Virus record (IMG/VR): IMGVR_UViG_3300013005_000001
Location: 124,001 to 188,000 of that record
Strand: one strand, 5' to 3'
Length of the DNA stretch: 64,000 nucleotides
Below, one piece after another: positions 24,638-25,726 of this stretch. A model generated the notes under the pieces. That model did no database searches, was not told where the DNA came from, and worked only from the letters and a program-made list of their open reading frames with translations. Positions within the stretch are counted from its first letter, which is position 1; every line of letters starts with the position of its first letter. A program made the translations under genes and the position numbers.

Positions 24638-24965
24638 AATAGTTTCAGATATATCAAAGCAGTATCTATTGAAAGAAGATGCTGTCGAAGGATTTAAGAT
24701 AGCAGTAGAGAATGGTCAAACACGTTTGGCACTCCAAGTGTTGGTCGATATCATCGACGGAATGATGGAGATTTTTGACTACGCTATGGAAGAAGTTTCA
24801 GAAGATGACACTATTGTAGAAGTTCCAGTAGCAGTATCTGCTCCAGTTGAAAAAGCTGTTGAGATAGCAGAAGTTATTGAAGCTGTTGAAAAAGTTGAAG
24901 ATAAAAAAGTATCTCCTAAAAAAACAGCTGAAGTAAAAGAAGACTCTAAACAAACAGTAGAATAA
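24627..24965 (+). CDS. Acidic hypothetical protein
   Basis: GAGG SD; ORF. Confidence 0.7.
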   Translation: MSIKIVSDISKQYLLKEDAVEGFKIAVENGQTRLALQVLVDIIDGMMEIFDYAMEEVSEDDTIVEVPVAVSAPVEKAVEIAEVIEAVEKVEDKKVSPKKTAEVKEDSKQTVE

Positions 24966-25726
24966 TGAAGCTAATAATAGGATGTCCAATTTATAAAAGA
25001 GATTGGATCTTACCAATTTGGTTTGCAGCACTGGAAAGACAATCTATTCCTCTGAGTAAAATTGGTTTCATTTTTGAAACTTCACCAGACGATAAAGCAA
25101 CTGTAGCAATGCTAAAGCTATGGAGACAGTATCATCCTGAAATTCCTTTATTTGAAATAAGGGAACGAAACGATATACCTCACTACAATCACGAAGACAA
25201 TTCAAGACAATGGACTATTTCAAAGTATGAAAATATGGTCAATCTTAGAAACTCTCTTCTTTCAAGAGTAAGAGAACTTCAGCCTGATTATTACTTTAGT
25301 CTTGATTCTGATATAATATTAAAGAACCCAAATACATTAGAGCTACTAATCGCACATGTTGCTAATGGAGCAGACGCTGTTAGTCCTTTAATGTTTATGA
25401 CTCCTTTTGATACAAATTATCCAAGCGTTATGAATTGGATAGACAAAAAAGAGTTTAGGGGCTATAGAAAAAATGAGTATCCCTTGGGAACTTACTTTAA
25501 ATCTGATATAATAATGGCAGCTAAAATGATGTCTAAACAGATTTATAATGATATTGACTATGAGGTGCACTCTCAAGGAGAGGACCTTGGTTGGTCAAAG
25601 AACGCAGCTATAAAGGGATATTCTTTATATTGTGCAAGTTATATATATGCTGCTCACATAATGCACGAGAATCTTTTGTCCCAATTCCAACAAATGGGTG
25701 ACCAAAGAGAACTTATCACAATTTGA
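24965..25726 (+). CDS. GT-A fold glycosyltransferase
   Basis: YYFSLDSD (DxD), GEDLGW, LRNSLL. Confidence 0.8.
   Translation: MKLIIGCPIYKRDWILPIWFAALERQSIPLSKIGFIFETSPDDKATVAMLKLWRQYHPEIPLFEIRERNDIPHYNHEDNSRQWTISKYENMVNLRNSLLSRVRELQPDYYFSLDSDIILKNPNTLELLIAHVANGADAVSPLMFMTPFDTNYPSVMNWIDKKEFRGYRKNEYPLGTYFKSDIIMAAKMMSKQIYNDIDYEVHSQGEDLGWSKNAAIKGYSLYCASYIYAAHIMHENLLSQFQQMGDQRELITI

What the first reader, a model, noticed from the sequence alone, without database searches (positions are those of the whole stretch)
24965..25726. Glycosyltransferase resembling collagen-modifying PLOD/COLGALT domains inside the head module
DYYFSLDSDIILKNPNTLELLI...VSPLM recalls, from memory, the GT-A-like segment of procollagen lysyl hydroxylases and galactosyltransferases. 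Its location between portal and protease, in a phage with collagen fibres and many hydroxylases, suggests virion glycosylation.
Basis: partly seen in the sequence, partly recalled or inferred. Interest (0 to 1): 0.6.

Follow-up and report, generated by a model that had tools for sequence, protein, structure and literature searches.

The report
Head-module glycosyltransferase of lake jumbo phages
A 253-residue sugar-transferring enzyme sits between the portal and protease genes of a large group of lake jumbo phages; its closest solved relatives are the inactive "helper" domains of the human collagen-glycosylating enzymes, but it keeps a full catalytic set and probably decorates phage particle proteins with sugar, which is plausible but unproven.

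Summary
The ORF (24965-25726, +, 253 aa) and the quoted motif are real. The recalled PLOD/COLGALT resemblance is correct, with a twist. The best sequence and structure matches are the non-catalytic GT1 domain of human COLGALT1 (E 2e-9; Z 23.8 over 237 residues) and the inactive accessory domain of LH3/PLOD3 (Z 20.9). They are not the catalytic domains, and the genome has no GT25 domain. Unlike those degenerate domains, the phage family keeps D114-x-D116, G205-E206-D207 and H231 invariant in 147 representatives down to 25% identity, so it is very probably an active metal-dependent GT-A enzyme. In about 500 IMG/VR contigs of 0305phi8-36-like lake jumbo phages the gene sits between portal and protease/scaffold (65/65 and 63/64 of the 80 closest loci). 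An archaeal virus (PhiF1) has the same order. More distant members lie in multi-GT cassettes, and the window's genome carries both cassette partners elsewhere. The collagen-like fibres are (GPT)n with almost no lysine, and the neighbouring oxygenase is prolyl-type, so collagen-style hydroxylysine glycosylation is not supported. Virion-protein O-glycosylation is the best reading, but the acceptor is unknown. Novelty is moderate. In passing: an apparent conserved +1 frameshift in the adjacent prohead protease gene.

The parts
24965..25726 (+). Glycosyltransferase, 253 aa, soluble single-domain GT-A. DxD = D114-S-D116, xED-like G205-E206-D207, C-terminal His = H231. Donor-pocket residues W83, K87 and R95 align with COLGALT1 W135, R139 and R147.
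24615..24965 (+). Small acidic ORF (116 aa) that overlaps the portal 3' end; its stop overlaps the GT start. It is co-inserted with the GT relative to 0305phi8-36. Function unknown.
   Evidence: (present in 74/75 related loci)
22967..24637 (+). Portal protein (upstream flank of the insertion)
25804..25977 (+). N-terminal piece of the prohead protease (contains AIHEG), in a different frame from the rest of the gene
25997..27532 (+). Protease/scaffold protein (downstream flank); the open frame extends upstream of the listed TTG start
27556..28311 (+). 251-aa protein at the position of the 0305phi8-36 head decoration protein gp124 (weak similarity, E 0.001); candidate acceptor
28356..29411 (+). 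Major capsid protein (HK97-like, PF25209); candidate acceptor
33543..34112 (+). Collagen-like protein with (GPT)n at residues 133-165; candidate acceptor
34097..35305 (+). Fibre protein with an Mtd_N domain and two (GPT)n segments; candidate acceptor
35302..35844 (-). 2OG-Fe(II) oxygenase next to the (GPT)n fibre gene; best solved match is prolyl 3-hydroxylase 1, then Bacillus anthracis P4H

Best explanation
The gene encodes an active, soluble, divalent-metal-dependent GT-A glycosyltransferase. It belongs to the same structural lineage as the COLGALT1 GT1 domain, the LH3 accessory domain and GT62 Anp1/Mnn9 (weak PF13704/PF03452 signal). It binds a UDP-hexose-type donor through the conserved W83/K87/R95/DxD pocket. 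It uses the invariant E206-D207 and H231 to transfer the sugar onto a hydroxyl of a phage structural protein. In this clade it is made together with the head-morphogenesis genes. The acceptor is either a head protein (capsid or decoration protein, suggested by position) or the (GPT)n collagen-like fibres (suggested by the SgtA/BclA3 precedent). The two GT2-type enzymes and the epimerase/dehydratase encoded elsewhere in the genome would extend or supply the glycan. Shown here: fold, motif conservation, synteny, and presence in RNA libraries. Inferred: donor type, catalytic activity, acceptor, and virion location of the glycan.
For: Fold: AF2 model pLDDT 92.6. Top matches are COLGALT1 GT1 (Z 23.8) and LH3 AC (Z 20.9), then Mnn9 (Z 19.8), with generic GT2 at 18 or below. 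Catalytic set: R95, S112, D114, D116, G205, E206, D207 and H231 are invariant in 147/147 representatives at 25-63% identity, and W83 in 143/143. Donor-pocket residues align with those the COLGALT1 paper shows contacting UDP-Gal. Working GT: distant members sit in cassettes with a PF00535 GT (28/30 loci), a PF13704 GT (26/30) and a nucleotide-sugar epimerase. The window's genome has orthologues of both partner GTs (E 8e-59 and 2e-39) plus an epimerase/dehydratase. Head link: portal upstream in 65/65 loci, protease/scaffold downstream in 63/64, capsid gene in 47/47. The placement persists at 47% identity. Archaeal virus PhiF1 has the order TerL-portal-GT-ORF16-protease-..-capsid. 0305phi8-36 lacks the insert. 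There is no terminator between the genes and the start overlaps the upstream stop. RNA-library contigs cover the small-ORF/GT junction in 4 lake metatranscriptome runs. No TM segment is visible in the sequence. Precedents: SgtA glycosylates Thr of GPT repeats (PMC7157674); mycobacteriophage virion glycosylation is cited in PMC12619734.
Against: There is no direct evidence of any glycan or acceptor. The family is not always in a head module: about 30 divergent loci and P0122 lie among other GTs, RNR, dCMP deaminase and sigma-factor genes. Gene position may therefore reflect expression timing rather than target. Collagen-like genes are absent from the one complete divergent genome, and PF13640 oxygenases from all five divergent records. 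The closest solved homologues are themselves non-catalytic. RNA-library contigs may include carried-over DNA.
Confidence: 0.5

Rival explanations
1. The acceptor is specifically the (GPT)n collagen-like fibres: O-glycosylation of the Y-position Thr (as SgtA does on BclA3), or of hydroxyproline made by the neighbouring prolyl-hydroxylase-like oxygenases. This is a narrower version of the best explanation.
For: Four (GPT)n proteins in the genome. A prolyl 3-/4-hydroxylase-like oxygenase is adjacent to fibre genes in the window and at genome 58002-58601. SgtA precedent. Collagen-like genes occur in 2-3 of 5 divergent-subfamily records. The closest homologues belong to collagen-modifying enzymes.
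Against: The GT is 8 kb from the fibre genes and next to head genes instead. The complete 137.5-kb divergent genome has the GT cassette but no collagen-like match. No PF13640 oxygenase occurs in any of the 5 divergent records. Homology of the phage GT to SgtA was not tested.
Confidence: 0.2
2. Collagen-type chemistry as in animals and mimivirus: galactose or glucose is transferred to hydroxylysine of collagen-like proteins.
For: Top homologues are COLGALT1 and LH3. Collagen-like proteins and many 2OG oxygenases are present.
Against: The matched domains are the non-catalytic GT1 and AC domains. There is no GT25 domain in the genome. The repeats are GPT, with Lys at Y in only two triplets genome-wide. 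The one oxygenase with a PDB match is prolyl-hydroxylase-like.
Confidence: 0.03
3. The three phage GTs glycosylate DNA (hypermodified bases) to evade restriction; the head-module position only provides late expression.
For: Divergent cassettes lie near RNR and dCMP deaminase genes. Phage GTs that hypermodify DNA are known (Pyle 2024, cited in PMC12619734).
Against: The genome has no ThyA-type hydroxymethylase and no C5 DNA methyltransferase, and ThyA is also absent from 5 divergent records. No Tet_JBP match was found, but that control was silent. The oxygenases are P4H-type (PF13640). DNA modification enzymes are normally expressed early or mid-infection, not from inside the head operon (general knowledge).
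Confidence: 0.08
4. It modifies a host envelope glycan (O-antigen, teichoic acid or capsule) during infection, as prophage TarP or Gtr systems do, for example to block superinfection.
For: Structural similarity to RmlT and TarP/TarS (Z 16.5-18). PHROG categories of the cassette partners are 'moron/host takeover'.
Against: There is no membrane segment or lipid-carrier module. The genome is a lytic-type jumbo phage, and the gene is fixed inside the late head operon across the clade and in an archaeal virus. RmlT/TarP rank below COLGALT1, LH3 and Mnn9.
Confidence: 0.12
5. It is a non-catalytic nucleotide-sugar-binding or structural protein, like COLGALT1 GT1 and LH3 AC.
For: Its nearest solved relatives are non-catalytic.
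Against: DxD, G-E-D and the C-terminal His are absolutely invariant across 147 divergent representatives. It is standalone rather than fused to a catalytic partner. Distant members sit in GT/epimerase cassettes.
Confidence: 0.05

Closest known systems
COLGALT1/GLT25D1 N-terminal GT1 domain (PDB 9evj, 9u7j, 8zgc)
   Same: Best hit by sequence (E 2e-9, query 15-142) and by structure over the whole protein (Z 23.8, 237 residues aligned, rmsd 3.1, 19% id). The DxD and the donor-pocket residues (W135, R139, R147) are conserved.
   Different: The human domain is fused to a GT25 catalytic domain, binds Ca2+/UDP-Gal structurally and is non-catalytic (PMC12003778). The phage protein is standalone and has an invariant G-E-D and C-terminal His. 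The C-terminal half does not align by sequence. A residue-by-residue structural mapping of E206/D207 onto GT1 could not be made here.
LH3/PLOD3 accessory (AC) domain, residues ~296-543
   Same: Second-best structural match (Z 20.9, 220 residues aligned). It belongs to the same lineage as GT1 according to PMC12003778.
   Different: AC is inactive and embedded in a three-domain enzyme. The catalytic N-terminal GT domain of LH3 is not the part matched. The sequence signal is insignificant (E 0.6).
GT62 Anp1/Mnn9 mannosyltransferases (PDB 3zf8, PF03452)
   Same: Third-best structure (Z 19.8, 219 aligned). It is the only Pfam model giving any signal for the query (E 0.011), and the profile E is 0.019. 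It is an active Mn2+-dependent DxD + His enzyme.
   Different: The score is below the Pfam cut-off (15.6 vs 28.8 bits). Mnn9 is a Golgi membrane-anchored, retaining mannan polymerase subunit that uses GDP-Man.
Clostridioides difficile SgtA acting on BclA3
   Same: A functional analogue: a Mn2+-dependent GT that O-glycosylates Thr of (GPT)n collagen-like repeats of a surface fibre (PMC7157674).
   Different: SgtA is encoded next to its substrate gene, whereas the phage GT is next to head genes.
Mycobacteriophage virion glycosylation (Freeman et al. 2023, as cited in PMC12619734)
   Same: Phage-encoded GTs that decorate capsid and tail-tube subunits; this is the known example of the proposed function.
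   Different: Different phage lineage and hosts. The relationship of the GT families was not examined and that paper could not be read here.
Giant-virus GTs (mimivirus R699, Klosneuvirus and moumouvirus 'PLOD1-3-like GT' proteins)
   Same: Viral GT-A enzymes of the same broad lineage (R699 Z 18.1; BFVD top hit is a Klosneuvirus GT at E 1e-13). R699 glucosylates collagen (PMC9546862 title and abstract).
   Different: They rank lower than COLGALT1 GT1. They come from eukaryotic viruses with lysine-containing collagens and lysyl hydroxylases.

Membership tests
GT-A fold glycosyltransferase (metal-dependent) | Rossmann-like GT-A fold | tested here: met
   AF2 pLDDT 92.6. There were 149 PDB representatives with Z >= 8; every match with Z of about 13.5 or more is a GT-A glycosyltransferase, with related nucleotidyltransferases appearing only lower in the list.
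GT-A fold glycosyltransferase (metal-dependent) | DxD motif, acidic xED-type residue and C-terminal His | tested here: met
   D114/D116, E206/D207 and H231 are invariant in 147/147 representatives. Their spatial clustering in the model was not inspected (no coordinates available).
GT-A fold glycosyltransferase (metal-dependent) | Sugar-transfer activity | not testable with these tools
   Needs an enzyme assay.
CAZy GT25 / COLGALT (collagen beta-galactosyltransferase) | Catalytic Glyco_transf_25 domain (PF01755; the COLGALT1 GT2 domain) | tested here: not met
   No PF01755 match anywhere in the 210-kb genome. The match to COLGALT1 is to residues 52-320, the GT1 domain only.
COLGALT-GT1 / LH-AC type domain | Closest fold and conserved donor pocket (W135, R139, R147, D166xD168 in COLGALT1 numbering) | tested here: met
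   Z 23.8 and 20.9, top of both structure searches. W83, K87, R95, D114 and D116 align with these residues (with PMC12003778).
COLGALT-GT1 / LH-AC type domain | Non-catalytic, part of a multi-domain collagen enzyme | tested here: not met
   Standalone 253-aa protein with an invariant catalytic set.
LH/PLOD catalytic glycosyltransferase domain (N-terminal) | Best alignment to LH3 residues ~25-290 | tested here: not met
   LH3 is aligned over residues 296-543, the AC domain.
GT62 Anp1/Mnn9 (PF03452) | Score above the Pfam gathering threshold | tested here: not met
   15.6 bits against a cut-off of 28.8. Relatives reach 19-23 bits.
GT2 (PF00535) / Glyco_tranf_2_4 (PF13704) | Score above the Pfam gathering threshold | tested here: inconclusive
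   The query gives no PF00535 or PF13704 hit at E <= 1 in the current Pfam, and it is not found by PF13704 in the own-genome search. But precomputed tables list PF13704.14 for all close homologues.
Phage virion-glycosylation system | Glycan attached to capsid, tail or fibre proteins | not testable with these tools
   Needs particles or co-expression plus mass spectrometry.

The most novel reading that the evidence does not exclude
This phage family is the free-living, catalytically competent form of the domain that survives only as an inactive helper module (GT1, AC) in animal and giant-virus collagen glycosylation enzymes. In these jumbo phages and in an archaeal virus it is a dedicated capsid-assembly-coupled glycosyltransferase that sugar-coats the head as it is built, which would be a conserved step of head morphogenesis not yet described for tailed viruses.
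Probability: 0.15. Interest if true: 0.75.

Novelty: new member of a known kind. Interest (0 to 1): 0.5.

Why it matters
Glycosylated phage particles are so far documented mainly in mycobacteriophages. A GT fixed inside the head operon of an abundant, recurrent lake jumbo-phage clade (about 500 IMG/VR contigs; found in lake metagenomes 2018-2024 and in metatranscriptome libraries) would extend that to environmental phages and to an archaeal virus. It would also offer a defined gene to test. Separately, the COLGALT1 structure paper reports relatives of the GT1 domain only in animals and giant viruses. A large prokaryotic-virus family with an intact catalytic set gives a handle on what that domain did before it became a structural helper.

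Tried and rejected
(1) P0134, an 842-aa GT-protease/scaffold "fusion" that would have implied delivery of the GT into the procapsid, is an artefact. The contig was called with TAG=Q, but the only in-frame TAG is the GT's own stop codon and the other genes there give no real support for recoding. (2) The short ORF abutting the GT upstream as a family-wide partner: it is conserved within the clade (74/75), but in divergent loci the abutting ORFs fall into several unrelated clusters. No claim is made and no complex prediction was run. (3) Identification with the recently described aquatic jumbo "moraphages" (PMC12619734): those are T4-like (gp19/gp25/gp13), whereas this phage's capsid and portal resemble 0305phi8-36. 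(4) Pfam, NCBIfam and PHROGs give no significant family for the query. (5) Scans of genome contigs with alignments A2 and A3 failed because no stretch was conserved enough, so distribution in cellular genomes was not established. The ESM Atlas rows suggest related two-domain GTs in Bacillota. (6) Promoter and terminator pattern scans were at background level. (7) Extending the sequence alignment with COLGALT1 into the C-terminal half failed with both profiles. (8) The Freeman 2023 paper is not held.

Full report
OBSERVATION. The window is bases 124001-188000 of a complete 210,302-bp virus record with direct terminal repeats. An ORF of 253 aa lies at 24965-25726 on the + strand and contains the quoted string at residues 108-143. 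Upstream is the portal gene (22967-24637; phrog_9232 E 8e-52; 32% identity to gp122 of Bacillus phage 0305phi8-36, E 7e-77). A 116-aa acidic ORF follows (24615-24965), whose stop overlaps the GT start (TAATG). Downstream is the protease/scaffold gene (40% identity to 0305phi8-36 gp123, E 5e-31). Then come a 251-aa protein at the position of the decoration protein gp124 (weak similarity) and the major capsid protein (PF25209; 38-44% identical to the capsid proteins of 0305phi8-36-like Bacillus jumbo phages). There are (G-X-Y)n proteins at 33543-34112 and 34097-35305, the latter with an Mtd_N domain, and two more elsewhere in the genome. Eight PF13640 2OG-Fe(II) oxygenases lie between 35302 and 45716 in the window. 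A ninth lies outside it at genome 58002-58601, between two collagen-like genes.

WHAT THE PROTEIN IS. Pfam, NCBIfam and PHROGs give no significant family; the only signal is Anp1/GT62 at E 0.011, below the cut-off. A sequence search of the PDB finds human COLGALT1 at E 2e-9 over query residues 15-142. A high-confidence AlphaFold model (pLDDT 92.6, pTM 0.91) was searched in three ways. Foldseek puts COLGALT1 first (E 3e-17, TM 0.74). The exhaustive VIA search gives COLGALT1 residues 52-320 at Z 22.8, then yeast Mnn9 at Z 19.8 and mimivirus R699 at Z 18.1. The second-look alignment gives COLGALT1 Z 23.8 (237 residues), LH3 residues 296-543 Z 20.9, Mnn9 19.8, and RmlT, TarP, SpsA and other GT2 enzymes at 16-18.

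THE TWIST. According to the COLGALT1 structure paper (PMC12003778), residues 52-320 are the GT1 domain. GT1 binds Ca2+ and UDP-Gal as structural cofactors and lacks the acidic residues needed for catalysis. Its closest relative is the inactive accessory (AC) domain of LH3, which is exactly the LH3 segment matched here. The catalytic GT25 domain has no counterpart: PF01755 finds nothing in the whole genome.

By my count of the HMMER alignments, several phage residues align with COLGALT1 residues of known role. Phage W83 aligns with Trp135 (ribose contact, the mouse fosse site). K87 (mostly R in the wider family) aligns with Arg139. R95 aligns with Arg147 (galactose contact). D114/D116 align with Asp166/Asp168 (the DxD). 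The donor-binding half is therefore shared. The C-terminal half does not align by sequence with either profile.

IS IT ACTIVE? The family is large. There are 452 word-search hits at 60-89% identity and 916 cluster representatives in the 1.84-billion-protein library, 534 of them at E <= 1e-10, almost all standalone proteins of 225-275 aa. In an alignment of 147 representatives at 25-63% identity to the query, R95, S112, D114, D116, G205, E206, D207 and H231 are invariant in 147/147, and W83 in 143/143. DxD, an acidic xED-type motif and a C-terminal His are the recognised catalytic core of metal-dependent GT-A enzymes (established knowledge). Their absolute conservation across such divergence argues for a working enzyme, unlike GT1 and AC.

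Independent support comes from about 30 divergent viral loci (27-37% identity). There the gene sits in a cassette, followed directly by a PF00535 GT2 (24/30 immediately downstream; 28/30 in the locus). A PF13704-type GT is present in 26/30, a further GT in 18, and a nucleotide-sugar epimerase/dehydratase in 10. The window's own genome carries orthologues of both partner GTs (genome 25475-26287, E 8e-59; 29318-30001, E 2e-39) and an epimerase/dehydratase (64330-65337). I saw no membrane segment in the sequence.

WHERE IT SITS, AND HOW CONSTANTLY. IMG/VR holds 484-510 contigs with a relative. In the 80 closest loci the portal ends just upstream in 65/65 loci with enough flank. The protease/scaffold starts just downstream in 63/64, the capsid gene follows in 47/47, and the small upstream ORF is present in 74/75. 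Median identities to the window are GT 66%, portal 76%, capsid 90% and protease/scaffold 58%. A member at 47% identity is still in a head module; one at 44% is not.

In 0305phi8-36 the portal gene runs directly into protease/scaffold, so the small ORF plus GT is an insertion in the window's clade. Strikingly, the only hit among 50,697 cultured phage records is the archaeal Methanobacterium virus PhiF1 (26% identity, E 4e-5). Its gene order is TerL, portal (phrog_9232, as here), GT, a small ORF, protease, and then capsid (phrog_3922, as here).

No terminator-like site separates the genes (at background level). The locus occurs in lake-water metagenomes from 2018 to 2024, and six lake metatranscriptome runs hold 58-66% of its sampled words. 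Contigs from four RNA runs, identical to the window, cover 24614-25342 (small ORF into the GT) and 25501-25666. Contig depths differ roughly ten-fold between adjacent genes (about 3-6 for portal, GT and protease N-terminus; 13-18 for scaffold; about 40 for the decoration gene). That is not what carried-over DNA would give, but the tool warns that contig depth is a poor measure and that DNA can be present in such libraries.

WHAT IT ACTS ON. This is inference. Collagen-type hydroxylysine glycosylation is unlikely. The repeats are almost pure (GPT)n, with Lys at the Y position in only two triplets genome-wide. The oxygenase next to the fibre gene best matches prolyl 3-hydroxylase 1 (E 8e-9) and then Bacillus anthracis prolyl 4-hydroxylase. 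There is no GT25 domain.

DNA glycosylation is also unlikely. The genome has no ThyA-type hydroxymethylase and no C5 methyltransferase, and ThyA is also absent from five divergent records. No Tet_JBP match was found, though that control was silent.

(GPT)n repeats are the substrate of a known Mn2+-dependent GT, SgtA of C. difficile, which adds beta-O-GlcNAc to their threonines (PMC7157674). The fibres are therefore a credible target. However, the GT family occurs in a complete 137.5-kb phage genome without collagen-like genes, and in five records without PF13640 oxygenases. Neither link is therefore obligatory. Gene position favours a head protein. I therefore commit only to O-glycosylation of a virion structural protein, co-expressed with the head genes, with the acceptor undetermined (confidence 0.5). 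That it is an active GT I hold at about 0.85.

COMPARISON AND NOVELTY. The protein works like a small soluble GT-A transferase. It belongs structurally with COLGALT-GT1, LH-AC and GT62, but it is not a member of GT25 and not the LH catalytic GT domain. It does not reach the Pfam threshold for GT62, GT2 or PF13704 in the current models.

The resemblance is already captured by automatic annotation: the ESM Atlas cluster holding this family (TM 0.93, 100% viral) is auto-named [quoted passage not shown]. Its neighbours are chordate procollagen galactosyltransferases (TM 0.80), giant-virus GTs and Bacillota two-domain GTs.

New here are four points. The family has an intact catalytic set, in contrast to GT1 and AC. 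It is a fixed component of the head operon in a large lake jumbo-phage clade. The same arrangement occurs in an archaeal virus. And the three-GT set co-occurs in both phage groups. I rate it a new member of a known kind, interest 0.5.

LIMITS. No coordinates were available to check that the invariant residues cluster in the model, or to map E206/D207 onto GT1. Distribution in cellular genomes was not established.

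Noticed in passing
window 25804-26010 (shift site about 25966-25972); related loci L001-L169: The prohead protease gene is split by a frame change. The first ~57 codons (ending ..AIHEGLTRKL**) and the rest (..NYNNYSAEALEKAL..) need a +1 shift to give the sequence that in-frame relatives and 0305phi8-36 gp123 have. Of 68 distinct junction sequences from independent assemblies, 56 need +1 and 12 are in frame. The shift occurs at two different positions but always at a zero-frame CGG followed by A, where skipping the C gives GGA (Gly) and restores H-E-G-L-T-x-N-Y. RNA-library contigs from 4 runs show the same letters with no indel. This looks like a conserved programmed +1 ribosomal frameshift gating protease synthesis.
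   Followed up: partly
window 35302-45716: A dense block of eight PF13640 (P4H-type) 2OG-Fe(II) oxygenases, interleaved with two glutathione-peroxidase homologues (37165-37923, 41380-41997) and a DUF6065 protein (37901-38623). Four of the oxygenases are tandem (41994-45716). Only one was compared with solved structures: it is P3H1/P4H-like. Another gave no PDB sequence match.
   Followed up: partly
window 34097-35305 and 33543-34112; genome 54254-57994 and 58710-59933: Fibre proteins with (GPT)n collagen-like segments, one with an N-terminal Mtd_N (major tropism determinant) domain. At genome 58002-58601 a PF13640 oxygenase lies between two collagen-like genes.
   Followed up: partly
window 20672-22498: A 608-aa fibre with a C-terminal Peptidase_S74 (intramolecular chaperone) domain sits between the terminase block and the portal. 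It has no counterpart at that position in 0305phi8-36 and is highly variable among relatives (25-100% identity, median 32%), suggesting a host-range determinant.
   Followed up: no
genome (outside window) 20286-30001: Two further GT2-type genes (25475-26287, 29318-30001) near a ribonucleotide reductase gene. They are orthologous to the partner GTs that flank this family's member in divergent phages. In those phages the RNR carries an intein with an HNH endonuclease (L125:36-2312).
   Followed up: partly
L012 (Logan contig SRR31258466_3030): The gene caller assigned TAG=Q to this contig and fused the GT with the protease/scaffold into an 842-aa product. The only TAG in it is the GT stop codon, so this recoding call looks wrong.
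   Followed up: yes
window 27555 (start of the 251-aa decoration-like gene): In all four metatranscriptome runs one contig ends at 27581-27584 and a much deeper contig starts at 27555, one base before the gene's ATG. This hints at a strong transcript start or processing site for the decoration and capsid genes.
   Followed up: no
window 7091-8260 and 55237-61899: A ClpB/Cdc48-type AAA_2 ATPase (E 7e-52), and an unexamined 2220-aa ORF followed by an ORF of at least 698 aa that runs off the window end.
   Followed up: no
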